DNA of 64,000 nt from the IMG/VR virus record IMGVR_UViG_3300025770_001492, positions 1-64,000 of that record; one strand, 5' to 3'. The notes below the pieces were generated by a model. That model was not told where the DNA came from, did no database searches, and was given only the letters and a program-made list of their open reading frames with translations. The translations under genes were made by a program, and so were the position numbers. Below, piece by piece: positions 13,268 through 36,081 of this stretch; the first letter of the stretch is position 1, and each line of letters begins with the position of its first letter.

Positions 13268-13305
13268 AATGCAGTCATTGCCCGTAAGCAGTGGCTGCAT
13301 TTTTT
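13268..13305 (+). terminator. rho-independent terminator
   Basis: AATGCAGTCATTGC/GCAGTGGCTGCATT plus T-run. Confidence 0.7.
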
Positions 13306-13720
13306 AATTTCCCTCAATTCTTTTCAGGATATCGGTAGTTGAAATATCTTTCGTATATTGCAAATAAACTAAGAGTATATCATTTTCTTCTAGCCACTCT
13401 TGAGTAAAGTTCATTTGCTTCATGTAGTCTTTTTTTGCCCAGTCGTCGCCAATAGCTATTATGTCTGGCCCAACATCTAGAATCGCAGGTTTGCTATCAG
13501 AACATCCTGTGTTTGTAATTACACGATCTACATACTGACAACCTAACAAACTTATCTCACGCTCCTTGTAGGACAGTATTGGAGTTCTTTTAAACTCTGA
13601 TACGAATTCATCTGTATTTAGTGAAACCACCACCTCGCTGGATATCTTGGCGCAATTCTTTAAAAAATTCACATGACCGTAATGAAACAGATCAAATGTG
13701 CCACCTGTATAAAGTATCAT
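13304..13720 (-). CDS. cytidylyltransferase (TagD/glycerol-3-phosphate type)
   Basis: TGGTFDLFHYGH, IGDDW, DISTT. Confidence 0.88.
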   Translation of the reverse strand: MILYTGGTFDLFHYGHVNFLKNCAKISSEVVVSLNTDEFVSEFKRTPILSYKEREISLLGCQYVDRVITNTGCSDSKPAILDVGPDIIAIGDDWAKKDYMKQMNFTQEWLEENDILLVYLQYTKDISTTDILKRIEGN

Positions 13721-14628
13721 CCAAACATCTCCATATATCTCAACATTGTTTCTTCTGAATGTGGAGTCTGCAAATGAAAAAATATAGCATTTTTATAATC
13801 CTTGCAAAGCTGGGTAACATCACAGTGAAGTACATCTGATACTCGCCCTAAGTAGTCTTGATTAACTGATTTTCCATCGGTCTTATAAGAAATGTGGAAG
13901 GAATGGACAGCAAGATTTCTAAAAGAATTGTTCTGGCATAACTCAAGATTCTCTTTATCGCAAAAAGGAGTTGCAATCTCCATCATGTGTTCATCGTGTA
14001 TGTTAATGCCATTTCGAAGCAGCAACCAATCAGGAGAACCTTTTGCTGAGTTATTGACAGATAGTTGGAACTCCTTTAAGTTCTCTAAACCGCTGTTTTT
14101 ACTGAGATCGAAATCTAAATTTTCTATTCTAGCTAATAGCTGTTCTACAAAAGATCTACTCAGCAATGAAAATCCTGTGTTGAATTTCAAGCAATCTCTG
14201 TCTACAGGGTTTCTTTTCCAAAACTCATCTAGAATAAATTTCCTCGGCAAAAGCCAATTATCCCCAACTCTATGTTTGAATTTTTCTATAATCTCTCCAT
14301 CTTTAAACAAATTATGATAGGCTATGTAATTCTTCCCATCACAACGATCTCTGACATCCTTATCTTTGCTTAAAATGACGGTATCCAAATCAAGAAAAAG
14401 TCCGTAGTCACTACCGGAATCCAAGAAGTCATACCACCTTATGGCCTTTCTCAACAGGGGATTGAATTCCTCGTGTTTTATCATCTGCCTAACAAGATAG
14501 TGCCTATCATCAAGAACATTAATCTTGACATCAAACCTAGAAAAATATTCATAGAAGCTACTCATGGCTAAATTATGCCATCTGTGATTGGACGGCATCG
14601 TGTTCAGTATGTAAGTTTCTACTTTCAT
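13717..14628 (-). CDS. GT-A fold glycosyltransferase-like protein (paralogue of 50125-51063)
   Basis: FLDLD DxD motif, FNTGF. Confidence 0.55.
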   Translation of the reverse strand: MKVETYILNTMPSNHRWHNLAMSSFYEYFSRFDVKINVLDDRHYLVRQMIKHEEFNPLLRKAIRWYDFLDSGSDYGLFLDLDTVILSKDKDVRDRCDGKNYIAYHNLFKDGEIIEKFKHRVGDNWLLPRKFILDEFWKRNPVDRDCLKFNTGFSLLSRSFVEQLLARIENLDFDLSKNSGLENLKEFQLSVNNSAKGSPDWLLLRNGINIHDEHMMEIATPFCDKENLELCQNNSFRNLAVHSFHISYKTDGKSVNQDYLGRVSDVLHCDVTQLCKDYKNAIFFHLQTPHSEETMLRYMEMFG

Positions 14629-14732
14629 AACAATTAACGACTGCCTTTAATTTTTATCATAATAAACTATTAATGAGAAAAAGTCATGTTTTTACTAATC
14701 TAAATTAGATAGAAACAGGTGAGGGTGGTTTA

Positions 14733-15314
14733 ATGAGAAAAGCGGCAGTAATAATTGACAGCAGAAGCAAGAAGGAACTCAAAGAAACAATTAATAGGCA
14801 TATGGACTACTTGCCTAACTGGGATCTTGTGCATATCGGAGATACAAAGTTCGAGGTGATGCAAGAATACCAGATGTACATGATGACTCACAATTTTTGG
14901 AAACGCCTTGAAAAATATGACAAAGTATTAATCTTTCAATGCGATACTGAGATACTGAGATTGGGAGTAGATGAATTTCTAGAATATCCCTACACATATT
15001 ATGGTGCCCCATGGGGTCCAAATTTTCCTGGAAAAACCCACAAAAACTTCAAGCTTTCACTAGGAGGAAACGGAGGAATAAGCCTTAGAGATGTGCAGGC
15101 TCATTTAAAGGTTACAAAAAACAGAAAGCCTAGATCAATGCAATATGAAGACATTTGGTTTTGTCGAAATTTGCCAAACGTCGCACCATACGAAATATGC
15201 AAAAGCTTTTCCGTTGAAAGCATGTTTGAGCTAGGAACTGTGTGCGCACATAAAATAGATCAGTTTTTATCTAAAGAAGAATGTTCAAAAATCAGAAACC
15301 AATATAATGCTTAA
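14733..15314 (+). CDS. DUF5672-like glycosyltransferase-like protein
   Basis: LIFQCD, YGAPW, GGNGGISLR, EDIWF, FSVE. Confidence 0.65.
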   Translation: MRKAAVIIDSRSKKELKETINRHMDYLPNWDLVHIGDTKFEVMQEYQMYMMTHNFWKRLEKYDKVLIFQCDTEILRLGVDEFLEYPYTYYGAPWGPNFPGKTHKNFKLSLGGNGGISLRDVQAHLKVTKNRKPRSMQYEDIWFCRNLPNVAPYEICKSFSVESMFELGTVCAHKIDQFLSKEECSKIRNQYNA

Positions 15315-16146
15315 AATAAAAAACAACAAAAACAAATACACAAATATGAAAGCAACTTTAGAAGAGTCTTTCTGGCCTTGCGCTGTTCATCCTAATATGA
15401 TTTGTAAAAAAGGAGAAAAAAGCGATTTCGCCAGAGGTATTGTTGAACATATGATCGACGAAAAAATGTCTGGAAAGCGGATTCTAAACTTTGGATTTGA
15501 AGATTATCCTGTATCGAAAATAATAAGCAAGGAATACAACCCAGAAATTTCTGTTGGATTTAGCTTCTTCCGTTTGGGAAAAAAAAATAAAAAAAACCTT
15601 TTGTTGACTAACGATATTGAAGACGTTCAAGAAAACGGACCATACGATATAATTCTGATCTATGATGTCATAGATCACATTCAAGAAGACCCAGTAGATA
15701 TATTAAAAGAAGCTAAAGATCTACTAAAGAAAAATGGAACAATCTATGTTAGATTTCATCCGTTCTGCTCAAGGAATGCTCTCCACCTGCATCATGATCT
15801 AAACAAAGCGTACATCCACCTGTTGTTCACAGGAAAAGAGCTAGACATGATCGTTCCAAATAATAAAAAGAAATACAATAGAGGGATAATCAATCCTTCG
15901 TTATATGACGACTACATAAAGACCAGTGGGCTAAAAGTTAAATACAAAAGGGAAGTTTTAGAAGTTCGTAATTGGCCGTTTTATACTAGCAAAGAAAAAG
16001 TTTTGAATCCAAGAGTAGAATTAAATGAAATATTCAAAGAAAATAAAAGAAAAATAAGTCAAATAAATGAAGTAAAAAATTGGAAAAGATTTATAGGACT
16101 GATAGACAGGAACATAGAATATATTGATTATGCGTTGGTGAAGTAA
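15307..16146 (+). CDS. class I SAM-dependent methyltransferase
   Basis: YDIILIYDVIDH, LKKNGTIYVRFHP; paralogue of 30552 and 33226 genes. Confidence 0.7.
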   Translation: MLKIKNNKNKYTNMKATLEESFWPCAVHPNMICKKGEKSDFARGIVEHMIDEKMSGKRILNFGFEDYPVSKIISKEYNPEISVGFSFFRLGKKNKKNLLLTNDIEDVQENGPYDIILIYDVIDHIQEDPVDILKEAKDLLKKNGTIYVRFHPFCSRNALHLHHDLNKAYIHLLFTGKELDMIVPNNKKKYNRGIINPSLYDDYIKTSGLKVKYKREVLEVRNWPFYTSKEKVLNPRVELNEIFKENKRKISQINEVKNWKRFIGLIDRNIEYIDYALVK

Positions 16147-16186: not shown

Positions 16187-17050
16187 TTAATTGCCTAATT
16201 CTTCCAAAACCTCATTCATGCGACCCTTTGCAGTATGATATTGCAAGGCATGGTTTTTCCCATTAGTTGCTATCAATTGAGAGTCATATGCGATGCGATT
16301 CAGGTAGTAATCGACACTCCTAAATAGGTGTTCAAAATTGTCAACATCATAATAGATCAAATGTTCCCCATCTATAAATTTATTTTTTACAGGAGTTATC
16401 ATTCTGTCAACCAGGACTAAAGGACAGCAGCTAAGAGCCTCAAACAACCTCCAGTCACCTTCCCAGCCTTGGGGATTGCATGTGACTACAATTTTAGAAT
16501 TTAACATTGCATTATAATAATCTTTTTGTATGCTTACCCTTCCAGCAGCCCCGCACTCACCTAAAATACCCGTATGCACTTTGTACTTTTTGCTAAAATT
16601 ATTTTTTATGGCATTTGAGATTTGATTTCTATAATGACGACCAGAAGGTTTAAAAAAAACTGACACATCGATTTCCCTTTTATCAAGAGGTTTGATATCC
16701 CATTTTGTAGCTTCATTTTTAACTATATAACTAATGGGGATTACATTTTTATCGCCATAGTCATGGAACCTGCTAGGAAACTTATCACACACGCTTCTCT
16801 TAAAATACATAAAAACTTTGTCATAAACACCTTTAAGGAGTTTCTGCGAGTCTGAATAGTCAATCATTATGGTTTTCTGTGGAAATTGCACATGATTTCC
16901 CGCATTGCGAAAATCAAAAAAAATGTAGTCTGATTCTTCTTCATTCTCAACTAACTCAAGTTGATCGTGGCTATTTACGCCATCCACTAATATTTTTAAC
17001 GAACCCATGGGGTTTCGATAGTCGCATGGTATATAAATTTTAGTTTTCAT
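16187..17050 (-). CDS. GT-B glycosyltransferase (exostosin/CgeB-like)
   Basis: YYNAMLNSKIVV, DWRLFEALS, EHLIYY. Confidence 0.65.
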   Translation of the reverse strand: MKTKIYIPCDYRNPMGSLKILVDGVNSHDQLELVENEEESDYIFFDFRNAGNHVQFPQKTIMIDYSDSQKLLKGVYDKVFMYFKRSVCDKFPSRFHDYGDKNVIPISYIVKNEATKWDIKPLDKREIDVSVFFKPSGRHYRNQISNAIKNNFSKKYKVHTGILGECGAAGRVSIQKDYYNAMLNSKIVVTCNPQGWEGDWRLFEALSCCPLVLVDRMITPVKNKFIDGEHLIYYDVDNFEHLFRSVDYYLNRIAYDSQLIATNGKNHALQYHTAKGRMNEVLEELGN

Positions 17051-17053
17051 AAT

Positions 17054-17731
17054 TTAAGATGTAATCAAAGGCCCAAACACCTGTTCTATTTCATCGATGT
17101 TCTTGATCAGCTTATAAGTTTCGTTGTTGTTTAGCTTGTGCTTGTTGTCAAGAATCTCCAGCATCTCGTCAGTAACCACAGGACTGTAGCCCAGATACTT
17201 CAGCATCTTTTTGAGTTGGCCTTCTTTGTCACCGAAGTACAAGTCTTCATAGAAAATTTGATGAGCATCTAACTCTTGCATTAGTTGATGTTGCCGCTTC
17301 TTTTTCTTGATCTGTTTGGCCAAGTCTTTAATGTCTATTGTGACTTCGCATTTTTTAAGATCTTCAAAGTATGTGCTTTTTCTCAGTCGGTTCCAATGGT
17401 TGGTGGCAACAGCCAATTGAAAAGACACTTCTGATTCCAATAAGTTTCTTCTTCTGAGTGTAACAAACTTGTAGCCATTCATGGCACATATTTTGTAGTT
17501 CGTTTGTTCGGTAACTTGCCCAAACAGGTGCTTAAATCCGCATCGATTTTTCATCAATTTTGTAATGTGCCCGATGGGTTCCGTGCCCGCTGGCGGTTTG
17601 TTTCTCCAGCCGAACGGCTCCCATAATATTTTGCCATCTATCCGTGGGTGTAAGCCAAGAGTTCGCAGCAGCGCAGACGACCCTGTTCTTGCGTGGGCGA
17701 TTATTCCAAATTTAGAAAAATTATGTAGCAT
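17054..17731 (-). CDS. sulfotransferase (Stf0-like)
   Basis: ARTGSSAL 5'-PSB motif, LRRRNLLES, FYEDL. Confidence 0.75.
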   Translation of the reverse strand: MLHNFSKFGIIAHARTGSSALLRTLGLHPRIDGKILWEPFGWRNKPPAGTEPIGHITKLMKNRCGFKHLFGQVTEQTNYKICAMNGYKFVTLRRRNLLESEVSFQLAVATNHWNRLRKSTYFEDLKKCEVTIDIKDLAKQIKKKKRQHQLMQELDAHQIFYEDLYFGDKEGQLKKMLKYLGYSPVVTDEMLEILDNKHKLNNNETYKLIKNIDEIEQVFGPLITS

Positions 17732-17815: not shown

Positions 17816-18709
17816 TCATAAAAATAATTCTATTCTACTTTTTTTATGAAATTTTTGAAATGTGATTTTGGTTACATCAATACCTAACATATCATCTACC
17901 GCCTGTTTCAGCCTGTCTCGGTGGTTCTTCAACTTTAAAAGAGTGGCCTCTCGAATGTAACTCCGATCATGATTACGATTAATTAGTTGACATACAGCTT
18001 CTTCAACTTTCTTCTCATTTGGAGGAACTGTGATGGCAAATGCATCATCATAAAACACATCTCGTCCTCCTTTATTCTGTACACTAACAACTGGAATGCC
18101 GCATAATAAATACTCAACGCTCACAAGATTACACCCTTCCACTTCTGACAGGCATAGCCCAACCCGTGATTTGTTGATAACTTTGGCCACTTGAGAAGGA
18201 GTTAGCCTTTGATATTCCCGATTTCGATTTAGTTCATTGATCCAAATTGATTCAGGCATTGCTATGCGTAGCTCTTTTTCGTAATATAAAATTTTTGGAT
18301 AATACACCATTCCCAAATTCGGCACTCCTTTGGCTAACAAGTGGTTTTTCCATCTCATCATTCCTGCGTTATAGATAGCGTTATATTGTAAGTTTTGATT
18401 TTTAATGCAAAATGTATCAATGCTTGTATTGATGGCACTTTCGGAACACAGTATTGCTTTACGTCCGAGATTACGAACAAAATTGACTTCTTCAAAAGAA
18501 TTGCAGCAATAGATTGTGCGATCATTGGGAAAATTTTTAATTTGATCGGCTACATAGGGAGCAAACCAAGAAAAACAAACAATGTAATAGTTTTTAGAAG
18601 TATTTTTAGGATTGTGTTTTTGATAAACAACATGTATAAACTTATCTCCCACTTGGGCCGAGCCACCAACCAATCCTGTAGAAGGAATTTTGTGTTTTTT
18701 CAATATCAT
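17816..18709 (-). CDS. GT-B glycosyltransferase (GT4-like)
   Basis: SEVEGCNLVSVEYLLCGIPVVS EX7E motif. Confidence 0.75.
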   Translation of the reverse strand: MILKKHKIPSTGLVGGSAQVGDKFIHVVYQKHNPKNTSKNYYIVCFSWFAPYVADQIKNFPNDRTIYCCNSFEEVNFVRNLGRKAILCSESAINTSIDTFCIKNQNLQYNAIYNAGMMRWKNHLLAKGVPNLGMVYYPKILYYEKELRIAMPESIWINELNRNREYQRLTPSQVAKVINKSRVGLCLSEVEGCNLVSVEYLLCGIPVVSVQNKGGRDVFYDDAFAITVPPNEKKVEEAVCQLINRNHDRSYIREATLLKLKNHRDRLKQAVDDMLGIDVTKITFQKFHKKSRIELFL

Positions 18710-18749
18710 ATTTCCAATCCCCAGAATAATTAACAAAAACCTGTGCTTT

Positions 18750-19433
18750 ATGGATGTTGTAATAGTTTCAAGAACAGACGATGACAGATTAAGAGCAATG
18801 ACTCAGAACTGCATCGACACCCTTATGAAGTCAGAAGAAATCGATTTCAGGGTATTTATGATCGAAGCCAATGAAAACGTATCATACGATTGTGAGATGC
18901 TTAGACAGAGCGGAGAGATTAACTACAACCGTTGTCTGAACATGGGCTTAGAACGATGCAACTCTGAATTCATAACCTTTTGCAATAACGATCTCATCTT
19001 TATGAAGGGCTGGCTATCATCCCATCTGGATGTATTCAAGCAACGTCCCGATATTCACTCTTTATCTCCAAAATGCCACTTCTGGCATGGGGAAGAATAC
19101 TCAAAGCACACCTCTTTCACGAATGGAATCTACGAAGGATACCGCACCAAATTTGAGTTCACCGGATGGTGTTTCACAGTCAGATCCTTGGTATTTGACA
19201 AGATTGGAAGGTTCGACGAATCAGTTTCGTTTTGGTACTCAGACACCATCTTCGCTACACAGTTGAAGCGATCCCGAATGAAGCATGCATTAAACGCAAA
19301 TTCGCACGTAATTCACCTGTTCAACCAGAGTCATCACTTGTGCAATGACACAGAATTGAAAAGTTTAACGACTGGTCAGAAAGAGAATTTCGAAATGAGA
19401 AAAAAATACTTAAACTCTCCAAAGCTAATATAA
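18750..19433 (+). CDS. glycosyltransferase family 2
   Basis: NYNRCLNMG, FCNNDL, IGRFDE, WYSD. Confidence 0.8.
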   Translation: MDVVIVSRTDDDRLRAMTQNCIDTLMKSEEIDFRVFMIEANENVSYDCEMLRQSGEINYNRCLNMGLERCNSEFITFCNNDLIFMKGWLSSHLDVFKQRPDIHSLSPKCHFWHGEEYSKHTSFTNGIYEGYRTKFEFTGWCFTVRSLVFDKIGRFDESVSFWYSDTIFATQLKRSRMKHALNANSHVIHLFNQSHHLCNDTELKSLTTGQKENFEMRKKYLNSPKLI

Positions 19434-19445: not shown

Positions 19446-19970
19446 ATGTTTGAATCCATAAAGCAATACCAAAACATAATCGTCACCGGCCCGCAGAGGT
19501 CAGGAACACGCATTGGAGCCAACATCATCGCATGGGATCAAAGTCGAAAGTACGTTGACGAACAAGACATCGGAATACAGAGCATTTCAAAACTAACAGA
19601 TTTCATATATTCTACAGAAAAGACATGCATTCAAGCACCCCGACTGTCTTGTTGCTGTCATCTTTTGGACTTCCGATCAACAGCAGTCGTATTCATGATC
19701 AGAGACACATCAGAAATCGAGGCATCTCAGAAAAGGATTGATTGGAAGCATGAAGAACAGGAGTTGAATTGTTACTTTCGAAAAGAAGGCCCAATTGCTC
19801 CGATCAAGTACGAAGTGTGGAACCAATTTCAGAAGCCCATTATGAAGTTGCCATTTCTTGAAGTCGAATACGCATCCCTTTCAAACCATAGATTGTGGGC
19901 GAACAAGAGGGATCGCACAAACTTTCAGTGGAATCAAACGAAAACCAAAGCTACTAAGTTGTTGCAATGA
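19446..19970 (+). CDS. sulfotransferase-like P-loop protein
   Basis: TGPQRSGT, VFMIRD, EVEYASL. Confidence 0.65.
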   Translation: MFESIKQYQNIIVTGPQRSGTRIGANIIAWDQSRKYVDEQDIGIQSISKLTDFIYSTEKTCIQAPRLSCCCHLLDFRSTAVVFMIRDTSEIEASQKRIDWKHEEQELNCYFRKEGPIAPIKYEVWNQFQKPIMKLPFLEVEYASLSNHRLWANKRDRTNFQWNQTKTKATKLLQ

Positions 19971-20716
19971 TCAAGATATCGAAAAAAAACAAAAAAAACG
20001 GCTATTTCTACATAGCTCACGGAGAGAAACACGTCCTTGAAGCTGTCAAGTCACTCAAGAGCATCAAAAAGTTCGAGCCGGACAGTCACGCCACAATTGT
20101 CACAGATTCCAAAGACAGTCTCGATCCATTTGACCTGATAATCAACAGGCCAAATATGGGAGGGTATAAGAGCAAGGTGGAGTACATGAACCTGACTCCA
20201 TACGAGAAGACGTTGTTCCTCGATGCAGACACGTTCATCTGCGGCAGTTGCGATGAGCTATTCGAGATGCTTGATTACTTTGACATCTGCATGGCGCAGG
20301 CTCCCGCAGAAATTGAACTAAAGCACTTCAAGCCGCCTCATAAACCAATTGCTGGGTGTGTCCCATGCAACACTGGCGTGATCTTGTACTCGAAAAACAG
20401 AACCAAAGACTTCTTAGAACTCGTCTCAAAAAGCTACGCATGCGCACCAGATGGCTTCTACAAAAACCACCCGAACAAACACAAGTCAGAACAACTTTGC
20501 TTTCAATACGCACTGATGCATTCGTCAGTCAGATTTTACGTCATTCCAAGCATCTGGAATATGAGAACAGACTTCTTCGTAAACATCAAAGGGGCAGTGA
20601 AAATCGTTCATGGCCGAGGCCCAAAATTCGAAGCTGCGATCAAGAACGTAAATAGAAACACACGAAACAGATGCTGGCATCCGCAAAGAATGGATATAGT
20701 ACGAACAATGAAATGA
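19967..20716 (+). CDS. GT8-like nucleotide-diphospho-sugar transferase
   Basis: LFLDADT, NTGVILY, SEQ, WNMR. Confidence 0.7.
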   Translation: MIKISKKNKKNGYFYIAHGEKHVLEAVKSLKSIKKFEPDSHATIVTDSKDSLDPFDLIINRPNMGGYKSKVEYMNLTPYEKTLFLDADTFICGSCDELFEMLDYFDICMAQAPAEIELKHFKPPHKPIAGCVPCNTGVILYSKNRTKDFLELVSKSYACAPDGFYKNHPNKHKSEQLCFQYALMHSSVRFYVIPSIWNMRTDFFVNIKGAVKIVHGRGPKFEAAIKNVNRNTRNRCWHPQRMDIVRTMK

Positions 20717-21546: not shown

Positions 21547-21589
21547 GGTCCTTATTTGCTTTTTGCCCTATAAAATAGTATATATTAAC

Positions 21590-26585: not shown

Positions 26586-26599
26586 AACCTCAATGTGTT

Positions 26600-27370: not shown

Positions 27371-27450
27371 AATGAGAATAGAGTATGCCAAATTTTAAAA
27401 CAAATTTTAAAACAAGTTTTTCATTTCGTTCTCTTACGCAACTACAATAT

Positions 27451-29166: not shown

Positions 29167-29689
29167 CGTTCCTAAACTTGCTCACTATAAAATTGTGTAA
29201 TTTTTTAGACTCATCAAATTGGTTATAACTTGCATCCTTAAAATCAGACACAATCTCTTTCAAAGGTTTAAAAGGCTTTTTAGACATATTGCAAAAATGA
29301 AATTTTATCCCACATCCCAGCTTTACATTCATGTTCAACGATTTAGAAACATCATGGTCCCATTCTGACTGATAATTGTCTAAAACGACAAACATATGTT
29401 TTACTAACTCTTCACTTTCATTAGCGAGAACTATCATTGTTTGTTGCATGTCTTTGCCAAGATTCAACAAATGCCCAGCAGTTGGTCTCCAATCAGCAAT
29501 GCTTTTAACTGCATTTCCTGCTGAAGTTAAAATAAAGTCACTGCGTTGATGATGCATGTAGCATCTATCGTCTGACTCTAGGTTCCTAACACTAGAAACC
29601 AACTGATCTTTGACATCCCCGTTCTGCAAAGGGTCAATCACCAACACGAATCCAATTATTGTTGGATCATAAAAATCTTCATCTATCAT
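29135..29689 (-). CDS. hypothetical protein
   Basis: ORF coupled to both neighbours. Confidence 0.6.
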   Translation of the reverse strand: MIDEDFYDPTIIGFVLVIDPLQNGDVKDQLVSSVRNLESDDRCYMHHQRSDFILTSAGNAVKSIADWRPTAGHLLNLGKDMQQTMIVLANESEELVKHMFVVLDNYQSEWDHDVSKSLNMNVKLGCGIKFHFCNMSKKPFKPLKEIVSDFKDASYNQFDESKKLHNFIVSKFRNDEKSKQDKQS

Positions 29690-30477
29690 AAAACACTTCT
29701 TCTCCGTTTGTGGTACAACCTTATGGGGTGATCTACAGTTTTCAAAGGATGCATAATAACTGCCTCTGGGAAGTTTTCATGCAAGTCTAGCTCTGGTTTC
29801 CACCGCATAGGGTATTGTTTATAACTGCCTTCCCACTCTTTCTTGATTTGATTCCAATTAGCAAAGTGCGCCACCTTACCGCCCATGTGATGAGCCAATG
29901 TGGGATAAAGATGTTCTGCCAAATCATACCCATCATAATTTGGGAAAAATCCTTTTGAAAAATCATTTGTATAATAGAGAAACTTCTCAAAAAAATTAAT
30001 TTCTTGCAACCGTCTGATAAACTCGCCTCTATGAAAAATACAACAACCTAGTAAATATTTTGTACAATCAAATTTCATATTGACAATTGATTCAATCAAG
30101 GGAAGATCATATTTGTTTGAAATATGTCTGGAATCGTTTCCAATACACCAAATATCTTTATCAATGTTTTCTAAATGTTGTTTGATTCTATCAGATGTAA
30201 AAAGAACATCATACTCCATATAGCAATACCAATCTGAATCAGGCCACTTTTTGACAGCCTCCATTAATCCTAATGTAATATTTCTATATGGACTCTTTGG
30301 ACAAGCATGCCAAAAACCACTTATTTTATGAGCAGGAATGTCTTTTTCGTACCATTCTTTAGAAGCACCATCGACAACTACTAAAACATTACTACCAACC
30401 CACTTCTGAACCGCCTCAATAGTATCTGTAACGAGCGGCGTGTCTCCATGAGCGTTTAGAACTACAGAAATTTCCAT
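29686..30477 (-). CDS. GT-A-like glycosyltransferase
   Basis: VVVDGA, YMEYDV. Confidence 0.55.
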   Translation of the reverse strand: MEISVVLNAHGDTPLVTDTIEAVQKWVGSNVLVVVDGASKEWYEKDIPAHKISGFWHACPKSPYRNITLGLMEAVKKWPDSDWYCYMEYDVLFTSDRIKQHLENIDKDIWCIGNDSRHISNKYDLPLIESIVNMKFDCTKYLLGCCIFHRGEFIRRLQEINFFEKFLYYTNDFSKGFFPNYDGYDLAEHLYPTLAHHMGGKVAHFANWNQIKKEWEGSYKQYPMRWKPELDLHENFPEAVIMHPLKTVDHPIRLYHKRRRSVL

Positions 30478-30551: not shown

Positions 30552-31478
30552 ATGGACGTGTCAAAAGAGCTACAAACTCTAAGAAAACTAGTCGAAACCT
30601 GCATGGAAAAGCTTGAAAAGCTTGAAAACCATCAGCAAACAGAGACCGTTCGAGCAGAAGAGCCTGTCGAATCAGAAGTAACAAATCCAGAATTCAAAAA
30701 TCTAAAAGATCTTTTAAACAGCGACCAGTGGCCACATGCAGTTCCACCTGATCTGATTTGTGACATTGCATCCGAAGAAGACAAAATGGAGCGAGCAGAA
30801 GGCGTTCTGTCGATAGTTTTAGACCAAAGCCTTAATGGGTCAAAGTTCTTGGACTTCGGATGCGGAGAAGGCCATATGGCGGTTCAGGCGAAAAAAGAAG
30901 GTGCTGAAGTTTCTGTTGGATATGACATAAAAGAACAATTTTGGGATAAGCCATCCGTAGCAAATGTTACAATTTTAACCACTGAATTTGAAAAAGTAAA
31001 AGAAAATGGACCCTATGACACCATTTTAATTTACGATTTATTAGATCATGTTGAAGACCAAGAATTGGTTCTTGAGCAAATAAAACAAGTATCTAAACCT
31101 GAAACGAGAATATTTGCAAGAGTTCACCCGTGGGCGGGACGGCATGCGTCTCACTTGTACAAAAAAATCAACAAAGCTTTTGTACATCTGGTATTCAGCG
31201 AAGAAGAATTAGACGAAATGGGATTCGAGTTAAAAGAAGATTCTAAAAAACCAAACAATCCAGCATTACTGCCTTTGCACACTTATGCAAAATTATTCAA
31301 GTCTAAATTTGAAATTATAAGCCAAGATATAGATCGTGACCCAATCGAAGGTTTTTTCAAAAATAATCAGTTGGTCAAATCAAGAATTATGAAAAATTTT
31401 GCTGGAAAAGATGTCGGAAATTTCCCAAACTATCAAATGGGACAGTCATTCATAGATTACAAACTTAAAATATCTTAG
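30552..31478 (+). CDS. class I SAM methyltransferase with N-terminal coiled coil
   Basis: LDFGCGEG, YDTILIYDLLDH. Confidence 0.85.
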   Translation: MDVSKELQTLRKLVETCMEKLEKLENHQQTETVRAEEPVESEVTNPEFKNLKDLLNSDQWPHAVPPDLICDIASEEDKMERAEGVLSIVLDQSLNGSKFLDFGCGEGHMAVQAKKEGAEVSVGYDIKEQFWDKPSVANVTILTTEFEKVKENGPYDTILIYDLLDHVEDQELVLEQIKQVSKPETRIFARVHPWAGRHASHLYKKINKAFVHLVFSEEELDEMGFELKEDSKKPNNPALLPLHTYAKLFKSKFEIISQDIDRDPIEGFFKNNQLVKSRIMKNFAGKDVGNFPNYQMGQSFIDYKLKIS

Positions 31479-32199
31479 AGTTTTTTTCGCTAGTGTCGTA
31501 TCCGTGTTCAATTGCAAATTTAACAATCTCCTCTTTTAGAGGAGATTCTGGTATATCTTTGTATGACCTTTTATCACCTTTTTTATTGTTCGTATTTGAA
31601 TGCTTGTTAGAAAAGGAATCTGTTTTATCTTCTATATTCAAAAATCCAAGAAATCCATTACCATCTTCGATCCGATGCTTGAAGTATAAACTTTCATCTG
31701 CATTCAACTCAATCAATTTATTCCAAGCAAGATAATAATAACAGGCTCTTTCTATTGGGTTATCATAATGCCATATTTCAGGAATCTCAATAGAGATGTT
31801 ATCTTCCCACGGCTTCAGGAGTTTATGAGTTTTGTTTTGAAAATATCCAAATCTAATCCAAGAAAAAATAACTTTAGCGGGGTCTCTTATCAAATGTACT
31901 ATTTTAACACCATTTAATATTTTATGACCTAAAAAATTAGCAGCCATATAGCTGCTTTCGCCAACAGGCAAAACGCCCTCTGGATACCAATTTGAATTTT
32001 CTTTTTTTGAGCACTTGCTATTTTTTAAACTTCCAGAACCAAGTGTCTTTAAAGCATAAAAAATTCCCTCTGGTGTAAATATTGATTCATGAGTGCAAGG
32101 GTGTCCCAAACTGGTCAGCAGTTTCGCTGCGTACACAGTTCCGCATCTTCCTGTTCCCGTTATTACGAAATCTAAATGAATTTTGTTGTTTTGTTGCAA
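31465..32199 (-). CDS. sulfotransferase-like protein
   Basis: TGTGRCGT, HLIRDP. Confidence 0.7.
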   Translation of the reverse strand: MQQNNKIHLDFVITGTGRCGTVYAAKLLTSLGHPCTHESIFTPEGIFYALKTLGSGSLKNSKCSKKENSNWYPEGVLPVGESSYMAANFLGHKILNGVKIVHLIRDPAKVIFSWIRFGYFQNKTHKLLKPWEDNISIEIPEIWHYDNPIERACYYYLAWNKLIELNADESLYFKHRIEDGNGFLGFLNIEDKTDSFSNKHSNTNNKKGDKRSYKDIPESPLKEEIVKFAIEHGYDTSEKNSKIF

Positions 32200-33236
32200 C
32201 CTTTTTCCTCTTTAGCTATATCTTGGGAGATTTCAGATCCATCAACTTCTTCTTCACAACCTGTGCAGTTTTTAGACTTAATAAATTTCGTATGGACAAC
32301 CACAGCAGGCGGGATTGCCAAAGTTTTTTCTACATTTACATCTTTTTCAACAAACTCTTCTCTTGCTTTTCCCTTTGCAATCTGTATCCGTATATATTTC
32401 AGATAGGACCTAGTGTCCTTCTCTAAATTGTATTTTTTTTCTTCATCTTCAAGAGATTCATCTCCTGTAGGGTGGAACACTCTTGCATCACATATTATAG
32501 GAACTTTTCCAAAGTCTTCATGAACTTTATGTTTAACGCCAGATCGACTAATTTTACAACAAAGCATTTCATCAGTTATTTTTAAATAACTGCATTTTTT
32601 GGACGACTTCATATAGGTGCTAATTTGATCATGCGGAAAAAATAAATGATCATAAAATTTGTCAAAATTTTCTAATGAAAACCAACCATAAGATCTCATG
32701 AATTCTAAACAGGATTCTGTCCACAACATACATGGTCCAGCAATTACTTGACTTTGTGGTTCGAAATTCTTAGAAAAAGGCATTCCTACTTCATTGTGAA
32801 AATAATGATGCATTTGCAAGTCTATTTCTGGAAACGGCCAAATAGTTCCCCCAAAGAATATTTTTTTATCCCTTCTGCACTTGTTAGAAAACTCCGACAA
32901 GAATGGTCCGGTACATATACAATCTGAGTCAAGGGTGATTAAGTCATTGAATATATGGTGCTTTTCAAAATACTCAATACCACCAACGAAACTTCTTAAG
33001 CATCCTCGTCCCCATCCGTTTTTTGTTCCTGTGAAGAATACGAATTCTTCTCCATAAATGTCTGATAATTGGTTGGCCATTAATTCATTGTTGTCAACAA
33101 TGAATGTAAAAATATAATCATCAACATTAGGATGAAAGAACCTAAACGCTTCTTCATTGTCGATCATGAATTCAGGATGTTTGTGTCCCAGAACTATTAC
33201 TAACGTTTTGTGTTCACCTGAATTTTCAAGAATCAT
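32172..33236 (-). CDS. glycosyltransferase-like protein
   Basis: TLDSD DxD motif; cluster context. Confidence 0.5.
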   Translation of the reverse strand: MILENSGEHKTLVIVLGHKHPEFMIDNEEAFRFFHPNVDDYIFTFIVDNNELMANQLSDIYGEEFVFFTGTKNGWGRGCLRSFVGGIEYFEKHHIFNDLITLDSDCICTGPFLSEFSNKCRRDKKIFFGGTIWPFPEIDLQMHHYFHNEVGMPFSKNFEPQSQVIAGPCMLWTESCLEFMRSYGWFSLENFDKFYDHLFFPHDQISTYMKSSKKCSYLKITDEMLCCKISRSGVKHKVHEDFGKVPIICDARVFHPTGDESLEDEEKKYNLEKDTRSYLKYIRIQIAKGKAREEFVEKDVNVEKTLAIPPAVVVHTKFIKSKNCTGCEEEVDGSEISQDIAKEEKGCNKTTKFI

Positions 33237-34908
33237 TATTCAAACCACAAATATAAAATGCCGACTGTATTTTCAGTATATCTATTAGCTTTCCGCTAAT
33301 GTTTCCTCTGCAACAATACTCCCATTCTGCCTCTGTAGGAAGTCTGTATTTTTTATTTTCTTTAGAAGATAAGACATCACAAAATTCAACACTATCAATC
33401 CAAGAAACATCAGTAACCGGAAATTCATCAACTTCTTTAATTGGGTTTTTTATCTTTATTTTGTAATTTTTGTAAACACTTGAATTTGAAATATTTTTTA
33501 ATGGTATTTTTTTTACACCTGTTAATTCAGCATACTGAGAAGTTGTAACTGGAGCGTCTGCCATATAGAAAGAATTCTCAATACAAACAATTTTAGAATT
33601 TGCATTCTTACCAGCCATCATAAATTCTCCAATAGGTATTTTCACCATATTTATCCCTAAAGAATTGACCCATTCAATGCCCATGTCTAATTCAGATTCC
33701 ATCAATAATCTAAACCCCAAATCATCCATGCTTTGGTCATGTCTTTTTGAATAGCGGGAAGACGATGAAATCATTGTTGGTTTAGACCTATAAGACCCTC
33801 CTCTAATTATTCTGTGTTTTTGTTTGTAGTCTAGACCGCAGCGTTCAGCTACATCTTTTACTTTATCACCTTCTTGCCGTAAGCATCTTGGCGGATCATT
33901 AGTCCACTCAGCATCAAGGCACCATTCCCAAATATTGCCATGCATGTCATATAGCCCAAACCCATTGGCCTGAAGGGATTTAACTTGTTCTGTAGACCAC
34001 CTGTCTGCAATAATTTTACGACTATCATAATTATCAGAACCATAATTAAAATTTGTATGAGAGAAAATATTTTTATACAAAAAGGCTTTAGTTTCACATT
34101 TCCAATTAGAACATATTTTTTCCCATATTAAATCATTTTCCCTAAAAAATTCTGGCAACTCTTTTTCAACAAGTTCTTCTTCTAAAATTTTAAATCCTGA
34201 AGATGATATGCAGTCTTCATAGGAAAAAACAGGATCTTTTAACCTGCGGATATTTTTATCTGACCTAGTCTGAGAATCATCAAAACACAAATGAATGTAA
34301 GCCAAATTATACTCACTCTTACATCCATATCTTGAAGACCATGGAAAACATTTTATGTATATTTTCCCTTCAGGAGAAAGCATTTCTTTTATTTTAGACA
34401 ATTCTTCGGTTGGGTTCTCCATATAATCCAAAACATCCCACAATAGAACAACATCATATGGAGCATGTTGTTTAACGAACTCAAAGTCGTCTGAAAGGTT
34501 TATTTCGCCAGGTTTCCACTGTTTCTCTATATCGTAACCAATTGAAGTTTTAGCATTCTTTTTTGACTCAAAAACAACATGCCCTTCTCCGCATCCATAA
34601 TCTAAGAAATTTAAATCTTCCAAAATAAGCTTTTCACAGATTTGACCTGCTCTGGTTTTTTTATCATTTTCTGTTTTAACTAAAAGATTTGTAGGAACAG
34701 CAAGAGGCCAAAACCCAAACACAGGCCATTCAAGTTTTTTGTAGATCCTCTTATTTTTGAATTCAAAATTTGAATCCTCTTTCAGCTTTTTAATTACGAA
34801 CTCGAAAGATCCATGCGAACTACAAATTTCAACAATTTCAGACAACTCTATAAAACCTTTATTCCTTAAAAAAGTTAAAATGGTTCGATATGAGTATTCA
34901 GAATTCAT
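33226..34908 (-). CDS. SAM methyltransferase with an inserted, circularly permuted FGE-sulfatase (SUMF1) domain
   Basis: LDYGCGEG, then GLYDMHGNIWEW...RGGS...GFRL ahead of MVKIPIGEF...LPTEAEWEY. Confidence 0.8.
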   Translation of the reverse strand: MNSEYSYRTILTFLRNKGFIELSEIVEICSSHGSFEFVIKKLKEDSNFEFKNKRIYKKLEWPVFGFWPLAVPTNLLVKTENDKKTRAGQICEKLILEDLNFLDYGCGEGHVVFESKKNAKTSIGYDIEKQWKPGEINLSDDFEFVKQHAPYDVVLLWDVLDYMENPTEELSKIKEMLSPEGKIYIKCFPWSSRYGCKSEYNLAYIHLCFDDSQTRSDKNIRRLKDPVFSYEDCISSSGFKILEEELVEKELPEFFRENDLIWEKICSNWKCETKAFLYKNIFSHTNFNYGSDNYDSRKIIADRWSTEQVKSLQANGFGLYDMHGNIWEWCLDAEWTNDPPRCLRQEGDKVKDVAERCGLDYKQKHRIIRGGSYRSKPTMISSSSRYSKRHDQSMDDLGFRLLMESELDMGIEWVNSLGINMVKIPIGEFMMAGKNANSKIVCIENSFYMADAPVTTSQYAELTGVKKIPLKNISNSSVYKNYKIKIKNPIKEVDEFPVTDVSWIDSVEFCDVLSSKENKKYRLPTEAEWEYCCRGNISGKLIDILKIQSAFYICGLNNDS

Positions 34909-35153
34909 ATGGATAAAGCTCTCAAAATACAGAGAACACTAAGAACCATAAAAATCGTCAAGAGACCAAAAAACAAAATTCCTTTATTTATTTCATTATT
35001 TATATGGTCTACTGCGTCGTACAACTGATCTTCATCTATTTTGTTTGATTGAACCAAATAGTCAAATTGAGTTTGGGTAATTTCTTCTTTTGCTATCTTG
35101 TTCGCCAAGGAGACAACCTCGGAAGGCAAAGAGTAAAAATCTAATTTCTTCAT
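34905..35153 (-). CDS. small C-terminally anchored membrane protein
   Basis: Hydrophobic C-terminal helix. Confidence 0.55.
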   Translation of the reverse strand: MKKLDFYSLPSEVVSLANKIAKEEITQTQFDYLVQSNKIDEDQLYDAVDHINNEINKGILFFGLLTIFMVLSVLCILRALSI

Positions 35154-35156
35154 ATT

Positions 35157-35324
35157 TCAACTTTTATTATAATTTTTTCTAATAGGCGCAGGATGAAGCT
35201 TTCTTTTCCTAAACTTAGCAAAACCAACTCTCAACTGAGAAACATCTTGATTGGTTAGCAAAGCATGATTTTTTAAAAAAGTCTCATACTCTTTGTCTGT
35301 GAGATCTGATAAAGTCCTTCTCAT
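35157..35324 (-). CDS. small basic protein (55 aa)
   Basis: Manual translation MRRTLSDLTDKEY...; SD AAGGAG. Confidence 0.55.
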   Translation of the reverse strand: MRRTLSDLTDKEYETFLKNHALLTNQDVSQLRVGFAKFRKRKLHPAPIRKNYNKS

Positions 35325-35370
35325 TTTGAACTCCTTGTTTAAAATAGTAATCTTTGTTCTAATTTATAAT

Positions 35371-36081
35371 ATGAGATCTTGCGTATATTATTTAAACGAA
35401 AGCAAACAACATGTAAAGATGGCGTTAAACAGCCTCAAGATGCTTCGCTTCCATAACAAGAACATACCTGTAAGGGTATTTATTCTGTCGAACGAATTCA
35501 TTCCAAAATATAAGTTCACAAAAAATTTGTTAGAATTCTGTAGTTCAAACGACATTGAAACAGTAAAAAAACCAATAAAATACGACTATTTTTGTTCAAA
35601 CAAATACCTCATAAAAGACTGCCCCGAAGAACGAATTCTCTTCATAGACTCAGATACATTTATTTTCGGGGATGTGGAAAATATATTTAAAAAATATGAA
35701 AACTGCGACTTTGCAGGATGCAAAAACAAATGGGTTGAAGGAAGAAACTGGAGATTCCTGAATGGAAACATCCCTTTTAATGGAGGCGTTCAACTTTACA
35801 ATAACAACTCGCATAAAAAAATACTAAAAAAACTACCAACTACCTGCAACAACCTAGGGGAGGATCTCGAAAAATGGATAGAAGGAAGAATGGATTGGAA
35901 CAGAGAAGAGATGGCGATATCAAAAATTGTAATTGAAGATAAGTATTCTTTTAAATATTTCGAAAAAGAAGACTGTATGATTCCTCTGGTCGAGGATGAT
36001 TTAGAAAATTTCAAAAAAACAACCATATTCCACTCATTCACACATCTTTGGGAACGAGTATACAAAAAGGTAGTAGTATGA
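35371..36081 (+). CDS. GT8-like glycosyltransferase
   Basis: FIDSDT, FNGGV, REE, FHSF. Confidence 0.65.
   Translation: MRSCVYYLNESKQHVKMALNSLKMLRFHNKNIPVRVFILSNEFIPKYKFTKNLLEFCSSNDIETVKKPIKYDYFCSNKYLIKDCPEERILFIDSDTFIFGDVENIFKKYENCDFAGCKNKWVEGRNWRFLNGNIPFNGGVQLYNNNSHKKILKKLPTTCNNLGEDLEKWIEGRMDWNREEMAISKIVIEDKYSFKYFEKEDCMIPLVEDDLENFKKTTIFHSFTHLWERVYKKVVV

What the first reader, a model, noticed from the sequence alone, without database searches (positions are those of the whole stretch)
13304..36081. A ~23 kb phage glycan factory with sulfation, methylation and rare-sugar synthesis
Seen: about a dozen glycosyltransferase-like genes (GT2, GT4, GT8-like), four sulfotransferase domains (one fused to GT2), three paralogous methyltransferases, a cytidylyltransferase, and an operon with a PseB/CapD-like dehydratase, two DegT aminotransferases, an ATP-grasp ligase and a PhyH oxygenase. 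More sulfotransferases and FkbM methylases lie at 44875, 53710, 58648 and 59797. Established: dehydratase plus DegT makes amino-deoxy nucleotide sugars, and ATP-grasp enzymes can N-acylate them. Inference: the phage builds a sulfated, methylated glycan on the virion or host surface, on a scale reminiscent of giant viruses.
Basis: partly seen in the sequence, partly recalled or inferred. Interest (0 to 1): 0.65.

Follow-up and report, generated by a model that had tools for sequence, protein, structure and literature searches.

The report
Huge marine phage glycan-building gene island
A very large marine tailed phage carries a 23 kb block of genes for making, linking, sulfating and methylating sugars; this is an extreme case of a known kind of phage gene cluster, and what the sugar coat is attached to is still open.

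Summary
Window 13304-36081 is packed with glycan genes: 6 glycosyltransferases (GTs) pass Pfam cut-offs, and about 7 more ORFs are GT-like on weaker evidence. There is one firm sulfotransferase domain, fused to a GT2, plus three weak or motif-level ones. There are also three paralogous methyltransferases, a TagD-like cytidylyltransferase, and an operon of SDR, two PLP aminotransferase-like genes, ATP-grasp and PhyH. The contig is viral: an IMG/VR record of 245.5 kb, about 49% complete, with tail sheath and gp19-like tube genes and synteny to the 595 kb uncultured phage LR756511.1. It recurs 100% identical in seawater metagenomes of at least 15 studies.

New findings:
- The island sits in a variable slot between conserved blocks.
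- A core module (GT2-sulfotransferase fusion, SDR, 210-aa mini-DegT, PhyH and two orphan families) recurs at 32-54% identity on other metagenomic contigs.
- The 245 kb holds no priming transferase, flippase, polymerase or PAPS-synthesis gene.
- About ten sulfotransferase-like genes are spread over the contig, one nested between the two tail tube genes.

Best reading: a cytoplasmic glycan pathway that uses host PAPS, with virion proteins the most likely acceptor. Remodelling of the host envelope is a serious rival. This is a new variant of a known kind.

The parts
13304..13720 (-). TagD-like cytidylyltransferase (activates a phospho-alcohol or sugar phosphate as a CDP/NDP donor)
   Evidence: Pfam CTP_transf_like 66 bits. 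Nearest NCBIfam is glycerol-3-phosphate cytidylyltransferase, 83 bits, below its 165 cut-off. HYGH and ISTT motifs are present.
13717..14628 (-). GT8-like glycosyltransferase; its stop-start overlaps the cytidylyltransferase gene. Paralog at 50125-51063.
   Evidence: ESM Atlas features 0.97 and TM 0.59-0.64 to viral GT8/GT34 clusters. Paralog at 38% identity, 8e-46. No Pfam hit.
14733..15314 (+). DUF5672 protein (GT-like family)
   Evidence: Pfam 93.8 bits. A homolog is in LR756511.1.
15307..16146 (+). SAM methyltransferase, paralog 1
   Evidence: Methyltransf_11 25 bits. Paralogous to 30552 and 33226.
16187..17050 (-). GT-B glycosyltransferase
   Evidence: Glyco_trans_1_2 39.5 bits.
17054..17731 (-). 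Sulfotransferase-like (weak)
   Evidence: Sulfotransfer_3 20.2 bits, below cut-off. ARTGSS P-loop and RRRN...S motif. Group profile hits PDB sulfotransferases.
17816..18736 (-). GT4-like glycosyltransferase
   Evidence: Glycos_transf_1 33 bits.
18690..19433 (+). GT2 glycosyltransferase, member of the recurrent module
   Evidence: Glycos_transf_2 33 bits. 43% homolog on L027/L028.
19446..19970 (+). Small sulfotransferase-like protein (motif level)
   Evidence: GPQRSGT and IRD...S motifs. 38% homolog next to the fusion gene on L030. No Pfam hit.
19967..20716 (+). Weak GT8-like protein, paralog of 35293-36081
   Evidence: GT8/Mannosyl_trans3 at E 0.06. blastp to 35293 at 3e-5. GT8 hit at 20195-20269.
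20749..21546 (-). Conserved orphan family linked to amino-sugar enzymes, possibly a GT-D-like transferase
   Evidence: 398 relatives by profile search. Of 70 scanned, 12 are fused to DegT, 1 to a sulfotransferase, and 1 hits GT-D at 2e-5. 40% homolog on L027. No PDB hit.
21530..22918 (+). Bifunctional GT2 + Sulfotransfer_4 fusion, the signature gene of the module
   Evidence: Pfam 38.9 and 104.4 bits. Full-length homologs at 45-51% on other contigs. The GT2 part resembles mycobacteriophage GTs at 24-27%.
22934..23704 (-). Conserved protein with DxD (DND) and NAGI motifs, putative GT-A transferase
   Evidence: 54% homolog on L027/L028. Motifs only. No Pfam, PHROG or PDB hit.
23673..24467 (-). 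Short SDR (264 aa) of the Polysacc_synt_2/epimerase-dehydratase group
   Evidence: Pfam 71 bits. GSTGSIG and YGASK motifs. Best NCBIfam hits are WbcJ, PseB and FnlA, all far below cut-offs. Homologs of 257-264 aa are in three other clusters.
24496..25446 (-). PLP aminotransferase-like protein (PLP_IMCC1989/DegT-related)
   Evidence: ESM Atlas 0.97 and TM 0.82. SLTK lysine motif. Word search finds only itself.
25422..26585 (-). ATP-grasp ligase (candidate N-acylation of the amino sugar with an amino or carboxylic acid)
   Evidence: Pfam CPSase_L_D2, RimK and ATP-grasp. NCBIfam hits are at subfamily level only.
26600..27391 (-). PhyH-type Fe(II)/2-oxoglutarate dioxygenase
   Evidence: Pfam 56 bits. 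HRD motif. PhyH recurs beside the fusion or SDR genes on L027, L030 and the 142 kb contig.
27451..28083 (-). Mini-DegT (210 aa): DegT core with the lysine motif, an internal deletion of about 50 residues, and no C-terminal domain
   Evidence: Pfam 90 bits in two stretches. Full-length homologs at 49% in LR756511.1 and 52% on L028. 182-198 aa versions elsewhere.
28396..29166 (-). GT2 glycosyltransferase
   Evidence: Pfam 64.6 bits.
29135..29689 (-). Unknown protein inside the minus-strand operon
   Evidence: No hit in Pfam or PHROGs.
29686..30477 (-). Putative GT-A-like protein; with 30552 it forms the conserved core pair of the slot
   Evidence: NTP_transf_3 at E 0.025 only. 44% ortholog in place in LR756511.1.
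30552..31478 (+). SAM methyltransferase, paralog 2; conserved in place in LR756511.1
   Evidence: Methyltransf_23 48.6 bits. 38% ortholog.
31465..32199 (-). Sulfotransferase-like (weak)
   Evidence: Sulfotransfer_1/3 at E 0.03-0.04. GTGRCGT and IRDP...S motifs. 34% homolog on L027.
32172..33236 (-). Unknown protein with a DSD motif (possibly GT-A)
   Evidence: Motif only. AF2 model unusable, pLDDT 33.
33226..34908 (-). SAM methyltransferase (paralog 3) fused to a permuted FGE-sulfatase-like domain
   Evidence: Pfam FGE-sulfatase 122.7 bits and Methyltransf_23 47.8 bits. Order of the halves.
34905..35153 (-). Small protein with one C-terminal hydrophobic segment
35293..36081 (+). Weak GT-A-like protein (Mannosyl_trans3/DUF5672)
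   Evidence: E 5e-4 and 4e-3, below cut-offs. Paralog of 19967.
3060..4022 (-). Outlying GT2
   Evidence: Pfam 69.8 bits.
44875..45780 (-). Outlying FkbM methyltransferase
   Evidence: Methyltransf_21 57.9 bits.
50125..51063 (-). Outlying GT8-like paralog of 13717
53710..54306 (-). Outlying Sulfotransfer_2 protein
   Evidence: 48.9 bits. PHROG 3347.
58648..59367 (-). Outlying Sulfotransfer_2 protein
   Evidence: 33.5 bits.
59797..60411 (-). Outlying FkbM methyltransferase
   Evidence: 37.8 bits.

Best explanation
The region is a real glycan-biosynthesis island of a huge, contractile-tailed marine phage.

Inferred from the families:
- A TagD-like cytidylyltransferase makes an activated donor.
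- The operon at 22934-28083 (SDR, two PLP aminotransferase-like proteins, ATP-grasp, PhyH) makes an amino-deoxy sugar that is N-acylated and perhaps hydroxylated.
- About a dozen soluble glycosyltransferases (GT2, GT4-like, GT8-like, DUF5672 and a possible GT-D-like family) assemble a hetero-oligosaccharide.
- Four sulfotransferase-like proteins, one fused to a GT2, and three paralogous methyltransferases decorate it.

Everything happens in the cytoplasm. PAPS, SAM and the starting nucleotide sugars come from the host.

The phage encodes no lipid-priming transferase, flippase, polymerase or ligase. One sulfotransferase is embedded in the tail tube operon. For these reasons the most likely acceptor is the phage's own structural proteins (tail tube, sheath, fibres or capsid). 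Progeny virions would then leave the cell with a sulfated, methylated glycan coat. The choice of acceptor is inference, not shown.
For: - Gene content.
- Intact catalytic motifs in the SDR, PhyH, cytidylyltransferase and both PLP proteins.
- A module conserved at 32-54% identity on other contigs shows selection and functional linkage.
- The 20749 family is repeatedly fused to DegT.
- No protein on the 245 kb has more than three hydrophobic segments, and there is no Bac_transf.
- No APS kinase or ATP sulfurylase.
- Sulfotransferase 202932-203723 (52.5 bits) lies between two gp19-like tube genes, next to the sheath gene, and its stop overlaps the next start. The insertion is absent in LR756511.1.
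- Cys/Gly/Ser/Thr-rich C-terminal tails on tube paralogs.
- Mycobacteriophage glycans sit on the C-termini of capsid and tail tube subunits, as stated in PMC12619734.
- The GT2 part of the fusion finds mycobacteriophage GTs.
Against: - There is no biochemical or expression evidence.
- Peripheral GTs that act on host undecaprenyl-linked intermediates would also look soluble, so the lack of export genes does not exclude a host-surface target.
- Only about half of the genome is in hand.
- The similarity to mycobacteriophage GTs is low, and that group dominates the database.
- The tail-operon sulfotransferase could be a passenger insertion.
- Several GT and sulfotransferase calls are weak.
- The published reading of such clusters in marine jumbo phages is host-surface change.
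Confidence: 0.45

Rival explanations
1. Host-envelope remodelling. The phage enzymes act at the inner face of the host membrane on host lipid-linked O-antigen, capsule or EPS intermediates. The host exports the altered, sulfated and methylated polymer. This changes the cell surface during infection, for example to exclude competing phages or to stop progeny sticking to debris.
For: - LPS-type clusters are reported in 76% of one group of marine jumbo phages and in cyanophages, and are read this way (PMC9123017, PMC13282480).
- The lack of export genes fits dependence on the host machinery.
- The island sits in a variable slot and differs between relatives, as expected for surface arms races.
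Against: - A dozen GTs plus the phage's own sugar pathway suggests building from scratch rather than trimming a host glycan, yet no priming enzyme is present.
- One sulfotransferase is co-transcribed with tail tube genes.
- The host-surface reading has not been shown experimentally for any such phage cluster, to my knowledge.
Confidence: 0.3
2. DNA hypermodification. Some or all of the transferases decorate hydroxymethylated bases of the phage DNA with sugars to evade restriction.
For: - Virus GTs can hypermodify DNA with diverse glycans (Pyle et al. 2024, as cited in PMC12619734).
- A ThyA-family gene is at contig 135238-136110.
Against: - The ThyA hit scores 305 bits over the full model, as a normal thymidylate synthase would.
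- Amino-sugar synthesis, ATP-grasp, sulfotransferases and O-methyltransferases are not parts of known DNA glycosylation systems.
- Twelve or more GTs far exceed known cases.
Confidence: 0.05
3. A mixed bag. The island is a store of independently acting auxiliary genes with several different acceptors, such as small molecules, lipids, host proteins or tyrosine sulfation, and does not form one pathway.
For: - The genes lie on both strands in at least eight transcription units.
- Sulfotransferase-like genes are scattered over the whole contig.
- Content differs among relatives.
Against: - The same combination (fusion, SDR, mini-DegT, PhyH, 20749 family, 22934 family) recurs together in four separate contexts.
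- Domain fusions link the parts: GT2 with sulfotransferase, and the 20749 family with DegT.
Confidence: 0.15

Closest known systems
LPS/cell-envelope gene clusters of marine cyanomyoviruses and other marine jumbo phages (PMC9123017; review PMC13282480)
   Same: - Large blocks of GTs, sugar-nucleotide enzymes, methyltransferases and PhyH/2OG oxygenases.
- Carried in variable regions of big marine phages.
- No export machinery.
- Function never demonstrated.
   Different: - This phage is not T4-like: no Gp23 was found (that search's control genomes also gave no hit, so it is weak) and its nearest relatives are LR7565xx huge phages.
- About ten sulfotransferase-like genes.
- A GT2-sulfotransferase fusion, a mini-DegT and a methyltransferase-FGE fusion.
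- One sulfotransferase inside the tail operon.
Mycobacteriophage virion glycosylation (Freeman et al. 2023, as cited in PMC12619734)
   Same: - Soluble phage GT2 enzymes glycosylate the C-termini of capsid and tail tube proteins in the cytoplasm.
- The GT2 part of 21530 finds these GTs.
- Tube paralogs here carry Ser/Thr/Gly-rich C-terminal tails.
   Different: - Those systems have 2-4 genes, no sugar synthesis, and no sulfation or methylation.
- Identity is only 24-27%.
- No acceptor is shown here.
Autonomous glycosylation machinery of giant viruses (Mimivirus and Megavirus fibril glycans, chloroviruses; from my own knowledge)
   Same: - Virus-encoded amino-sugar pathways (dehydratase, aminotransferase, acyltransferase) plus many soluble GTs and methyltransferases.
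- They build virion glycans in the cytoplasm without ER/Golgi or lipid carriers.
- The nearest Atlas cluster of 13717 is mostly Nucleocytoviricota.
   Different: - This is a tailed phage of a prokaryote.
- Sulfation is prominent.
- No orthology of the pathway enzymes was tested.
Bacterial Wzx/Wzy- or ABC-dependent O-antigen and capsule loci
   Same: Co-located sugar-nucleotide synthesis, GTs and tailoring enzymes.
   Different: No priming phosphoglycosyl transferase, flippase, polymerase, chain-length regulator, ligase or ABC transporter on 245 kb.

Membership tests
Tailed bacteriophage (huge/jumbo phage) | Tail structural genes and phage replication genes on the same contig | tested here: met
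   Phage_sheath_1 53 bits. Two gp19-like tube genes. PHROG DNA polymerase, helicases and RNA ligase. IMG/VR record. 122 of 329 ORFs are syntenic with LR756511.1. Terminase and major capsid were not found in this half.
Phage LPS-type auxiliary glycan cluster (marine jumbo phages) | Cluster of GTs plus sugar-nucleotide and tailoring enzymes in a phage genome, without export genes | tested here: met
Phage LPS-type auxiliary glycan cluster (marine jumbo phages) | Product alters the host's LPS or cell surface | not testable with these tools
   Needs infected-cell LPS/EPS analysis.
Mycobacteriophage-type virion glycosylation | Phage GT2 enzymes related to the Che8/Myrna-type GTs | tested here: inconclusive
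   tblastn gives 24-27% identity over the GT2 half only, E 1e-9 to 1e-4.
Mycobacteriophage-type virion glycosylation | Glycans on C-terminal extensions of capsid or tail tube subunits | not testable with these tools
   Only a lead: Cys/Gly/Ser/Thr-rich C-terminal tails on tube paralogs.
Pseudaminic/legionaminic acid-type pathway (PseB, PseC) | Proteins reach the equivalog scores of PseB, PseC or LegB/LegC | tested here: not met
   SDR scores 34.6 bits against a cut-off of 408. Mini-DegT scores 50.8 bits against a cut-off of 424. No PseF/PseI-type genes were seen in Pfam scans.
Wzx/Wzy or ABC-transporter polysaccharide locus | Priming transferase, flippase or transporter, polymerase | tested here: not met
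   No protein with more than three hydrophobic segments on 245 kb. No Bac_transf. Caveat: about half of the genome is unseen.
PAPS-dependent sulfotransferases | Sulfotransferase domain above the family cut-off, with 5'-PSB and 3'-PB motifs | tested here: met
   Met for the 21530 C-terminal half (104 bits), 53710, 58648 and contig 202932. Only weak or motif-level for 17054, 19446 and 31465.
Self-sufficient sulfation system | Own ATP sulfurylase and APS kinase | tested here: not met
   No hit on the contig. No APS kinase in the complete relative LR756511.1.
Phage DNA glycosylation | Base hydroxymethylase plus DNA glucosyltransferase-type enzymes | tested here: inconclusive
   One ThyA-family gene at 305 bits, probably an ordinary thymidylate synthase. 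No specific DNA-GT family was tested.

The most novel reading that the evidence does not exclude
Huge marine phages coat their own particles (tail tube, sheath, fibres, perhaps capsid) with a sulfated, O-methylated, amino-sugar-containing glycan. The glycan is built entirely in the host cytoplasm by a phage-encoded pathway of 25 or more genes, whose conserved core is a bifunctional GT2-sulfotransferase, a mini-DegT, a short SDR, PhyH and two orphan transferase-like families. This would be the first sulfated glycan on a phage virion. It would be a bacterial-virus counterpart of giant-virus fibril glycans.
Probability: 0.3. Interest if true: 0.85.

Novelty: new variant of a known kind. Interest (0 to 1): 0.6.

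Why it matters
Phage sulfotransferases are rare. The 53710 type occurs in 5 of 50,697 GenBank phage records, all of them large phages. A recent paper calls their role unclear (PMC10580990).

This phage offers a tractable case:
- It is cosmopolitan and clonal.
- It carries about ten such genes.
- It has a recurrent, fusion-linked module.
- One sulfotransferase is wired into the tail operon.

If the product sits on virions, it would change how we think about the surface chemistry of large marine viruses: charge, stickiness to marine gels, and protection from enzymes and grazers. It would also extend 'virus-made glycans' from giant viruses to phages.

If the product sits on the host, it is the richest example of phage-directed envelope remodelling.

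The mini-DegT, the GT2-sulfotransferase fusion and the 20749 family (398 relatives, no Pfam model) are also new enzyme material.

Tried and rejected
- **AF2 on single sequences.** Models of 32172-33236 and 20749-21546 had pLDDT 33 and 34. They were unusable, so no fold search was run.
- **PHROGs on ten unassigned ORFs.** Nothing useful.
- **Profile-profile comparison.** hhalign of two-sequence profiles for 22934, 13717 and 19967 aligned only the DxD stretch of 13717 and 19967.
- **PDB profile searches.** Searches for the 20749, 22934 and 29686 families found nothing meaningful.
- **IMG/VR scans.** Scans with the fusion protein and with the left-flank gene found no relatives. The PEPCK anchor found two contigs that share only PEPCK and one small ORF.
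- **Cassette-swap idea, rejected.** Read laying showed loose ends at 22996 and 28038 in two runs, which I first read as an alternative cassette replacing the operon. The 30-mers belong to unrelated contigs that share only an 18-nt AT-rich word with the window.
- **Population variation.** Contigs from four independent runs are identical to the window, so no dN/dS could be computed.
- **Promoter motif.** The 8-mer enrichment upstream of genes gave only T-runs, so there was no late-promoter motif to link the island to structural genes.
- **Host.** It was not identified. The nearest cellular PEPCK hits found by the pattern scan are Campylobacterota at 34-37%, which I do not take as a host call.
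- **Cellular contig.** Rejected, because of the sheath and tube genes, the PHROG content and the synteny with a 595 kb phage genome.

Full report
**What the contig is**

The window is the first 64 kb of a single 245,522 bp IMG/VR virus record. It is linear, CheckV rates it about 49% complete, and its GC is 37.7%. It carries six tRNA genes and a tmRNA-like gene.

Phage character is well supported:
- A tail sheath gene at 204486-206843 (Phage_sheath_1, 53 bits).
- Two T4 gp19-like tail tube genes.
- PHROG hits to a DNA polymerase, a DnaB-like helicase, another helicase, ribonucleotide reductase, RNA ligase, an HNH endonuclease and a sigma factor.

The nearest GenBank record is the 595 kb 'uncultured phage' LR756511.1. 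A PrkA-like protein is 65.6% identical. In my own tblastn, 122 of 329 ORFs have homologs there, in long collinear blocks. Terminase and major capsid genes were not found in this half.

The DNA of 22934-28083 is held by at least 20 marine or seawater metagenome runs from at least 15 studies, dated 2012-2025. Contigs from four of these runs are identical to the window wherever they cover it. An identical 25 kb JGI contig also exists. The 'contig is cellular' refutation therefore fails: this is a cosmopolitan, clonal, huge marine myovirus-type phage. Its host is unknown.

**Check of the observation**

The ORFs fill the region at the stated coordinates.

These pass Pfam cut-offs:
- Cytidylyltransferase (13304).
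- DUF5672 (14733).
- Two GT-B/GT4-like proteins (16187, 17816).
- GT2 (18690, 28396).
- A GT2 + Sulfotransfer_4 fusion (21530).
- An SDR of the Polysacc_synt_2 group (23673).
- ATP-grasp (25422).
- PhyH (26600).
- DegT (27451).
- Three methyltransferases (15307, 30552, 33226). These are true paralogs.

The second aminotransferase (24496) is invisible to the local Pfam and to the word search. The ESM Atlas places it with PLP_IMCC1989/DegT clusters (0.97; TM 0.82). The Atlas also places 13717 with viral GT8-like clusters, and 50125 is its paralog.

Three of the four claimed sulfotransferase domains (17054, 19446, 31465) rest on weaker evidence:
- Sub-threshold Pfam hits.
- The (R/K)(S/T/C)G(S/T) P-loop and an RDP-type motif, read directly in the sequence.
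- A profile of all eight such ORFs on the contig reaches PDB sulfotransferases at E 1e-4. Without the two strong members it reaches them only at E 0.1-0.4.

ORFs 19967, 22934, 29686, 32172 and 35293 are GT-like only by weak hits or DxD motifs. The outlying FkbM and Sulfotransfer_2 genes are confirmed.

*(a) A variable slot.* The left flank (106-9441) is collinear with LR756511.1 at 191.7-203.0 kb. The HNH gene at 39934 matches LR756511.1 at 213.2 kb. Between these anchors the relative has about 10 kb and this phage has 30 kb. Only the divergent pair 29686-30477 and 30552-31478 is conserved in place (44% and 38%). The relative keeps its own DegT, cytidylyltransferase, methyltransferase and Sulfotransfer_2 genes elsewhere, at about 107-122 kb. 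Glycan genes are therefore a lineage trait with fast turnover.

*(b) A recurrent module.* The GT2-sulfotransferase fusion has full-length homologs at 45-51% identity on other metagenomic contigs. Their neighbourhoods repeat the same set:
- 22934 family (54%).
- Short SDR (35%).
- 20749 family (40%).
- GT2 18690 (43%).
- Sulfotransferase-like 31465 (34%) and 19446 (38%).
- Mini-DegT (52%).
- PhyH (32%).

This conservation across contigs of 31-35% GC shows that these are real, selected and functionally linked genes.

*(c) The 20749 family.* It has 398 relatives in 1.84 billion representatives and no Pfam model. Of 70 members scanned, 12 are fused to a C-terminal DegT domain, one to a sulfotransferase, and one touches the GT-D family at 2e-5. 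This points to a transferase that handles the amino sugar, but the fold is not established.

*(d) The mini-DegT.* It is 210 aa. It keeps the N-terminal and lysine-bearing segments, lacks about 50 internal residues and lacks the whole C-terminal domain. It is conserved at full length in LR756511.1 (49%) and on L028 (52%). It is therefore a compact family, not a pseudogene.

*(e) Catalytic motifs.* These are intact in the SDR (GSTGSIG, YGASK), PhyH (HRD), the cytidylyltransferase (HYGH, ISTT) and both PLP proteins (S-x-T-K).

**What is missing**

No ORF on the 245 kb has more than three hydrophobic segments, and every enzyme in the island looks soluble. There is no Bac_transf priming enzyme, no sulfatase, and no APS kinase or ATP sulfurylase. 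The complete relative also has no APS kinase. The pathway must therefore run in the cytoplasm on host PAPS. If it feeds a surface polymer, it must borrow the host's priming and export steps. Half of the genome is still unseen.

**Sulfotransferases across the contig**

Besides six in the window, the contig has four more:
- A Sulfotransfer_3 gene at 202932-203723 (52.5 bits).
- P-loop-bearing ORFs at 127291, 169409 and 243283. The last lies next to a GT9-like gene.

The gene at 202932 lies between the two tail tube paralogs and beside the sheath gene, on the same strand. Its stop overlaps the next start. In LR756511.1 the two tube genes are only about 60-220 bp apart, with no such gene between them.

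Tube paralog 203806-204399 ends in a 28-residue Cys/Gly/Ser/Thr-rich tail. The LR756511.1 tube paralogs carry Cys-rich and Ser/Pro/Gly-rich tails.

In GenBank phages the 53710-type sulfotransferase occurs in 5 of 50,697 records, all large phages. The 202932 type occurs in none.

**Mechanism**

*Shown:* the gene families, the paralogy, the fusions, the conservation and the absences listed above.

*Inferred from established enzymology:*
- An SDR plus a DegT-type aminotransferase yields an amino-deoxy nucleotide sugar.
- ATP-grasp enzymes ligate carboxylates to amines.
- PhyH-type dioxygenases hydroxylate.
- TagD-type enzymes make CDP-activated donors.
- GTs, PAPS-dependent sulfotransferases and SAM methyltransferases build and decorate the chain.

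The sugar cannot be named, because all operon enzymes fall far below NCBIfam equivalog scores.

*The acceptor is the open point.* I favour phage structural proteins, at about 0.45, for four reasons:
- A pathway this complete with no priming enzyme needs a non-lipid first acceptor.
- One sulfotransferase is wired into the tail operon.
- The tube proteins have candidate acceptor tails.
- Mycobacteriophages set a precedent for cytoplasmic glycosylation of capsid and tube C-termini (PMC12619734). The GT2 half of the fusion weakly resembles those enzymes.

Host-envelope remodelling is the standard reading of such clusters in marine jumbo phages. It stays a strong rival at about 0.3. DNA glycosylation and a 'mixed bag' of unrelated functions are less likely.

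**Comparison and novelty**

Large LPS-type clusters in marine jumbo phages and the glycan machinery of giant viruses are known, so the kind is not new.

What is new here:
- The scale of sulfation.
- The GT2-sulfotransferase fusion as the hallmark of a recurrent module.
- The mini-DegT.
- The DegT-linked orphan family.
- The methyltransferase fused to a permuted FGE-like domain.
- The sulfotransferase inside the tail module.

No paper in the held library joins sulfotransferases, glycosyltransferases and jumbo or huge phages. One paper states that the role of phage sulfotransferases is unclear. I rate the finding a new variant of a known kind, with interest 0.6.

**Limits**

- Several assignments remain motif-level.
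- There is no RNA evidence.
- The host is unknown.
- The read laying loose ends that looked like a cassette swap proved to be an artefact.

Noticed in passing
window 33226-34908 (-): A class I methyltransferase is fused to an FGE-sulfatase-like domain whose halves are swapped: the C-terminal half lies at aa 284-404 and the N-terminal half at aa 420-538. There is no DinB domain and no sulfatase gene on the contig, so it is neither OvoA/EgtB-like nor an obvious sulfatase maturase. It may be a glycan-binding module.
   Followed up: partly
contig 202427-206843 (outside the window; L026:6427-10843): A Sulfotransfer_3 gene (202932-203723) is nested between two gp19-like tail tube paralogs, next to the tail sheath gene. 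It is absent at this spot in LR756511.1. Tube paralogs carry Cys/Gly/Ser/Thr- or Ser/Pro/Gly-rich C-terminal tails.
   Followed up: partly
window 36048-43021 and 5901-6971: A block of central-metabolism auxiliary genes lies beside the island: a saccharopine-dehydrogenase-like gene, proline dehydrogenase, ATP-type PEPCK (303 bits), M42 aminopeptidase and ribose-phosphate pyrophosphokinase.
   Followed up: no
window 41371-41445 and 55258-55613; contig 111581-111937 and 177186-177260: Six tRNA genes (Arg, Glu, Asn, Gly, Pro, Met) and a tmRNA-like gene with tag DKTNFAMAA (ARAGORN).
   Followed up: no
window 27451-28083 (-); LR756511.1 154653-155264; L028:1926-2522: A compact family of DegT-like proteins of 182-210 aa. 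They have the lysine motif but lack the C-terminal domain, and are conserved at about 50% identity among large marine phage-like contigs.
   Followed up: partly
contig 71482-78831, 159566-166775 and 239883-241481 (L001, L005, L006, L010): A 2449-aa protein with Laminin_G_3 domains and a set of paralogous ORFs that share N-terminal or internal segments with it; these look like fibres or receptor-binding proteins. Sulfotransferase-like ORFs at 169409 and 243283, and a GT9-like gene at 241976, lie near them.
   Followed up: no
window 46672-46911 and 47020-47244 (+): Two tandem small paralogous ORFs (66% identical, 74-79 aa) of unknown function.
   Followed up: no
window 22934-28083: Contigs from four independent seawater runs are letter-for-letter identical to the window where they cover it. 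This is unusual clonality for a phage seen in samples from 2012 to 2025.
   Followed up: partly
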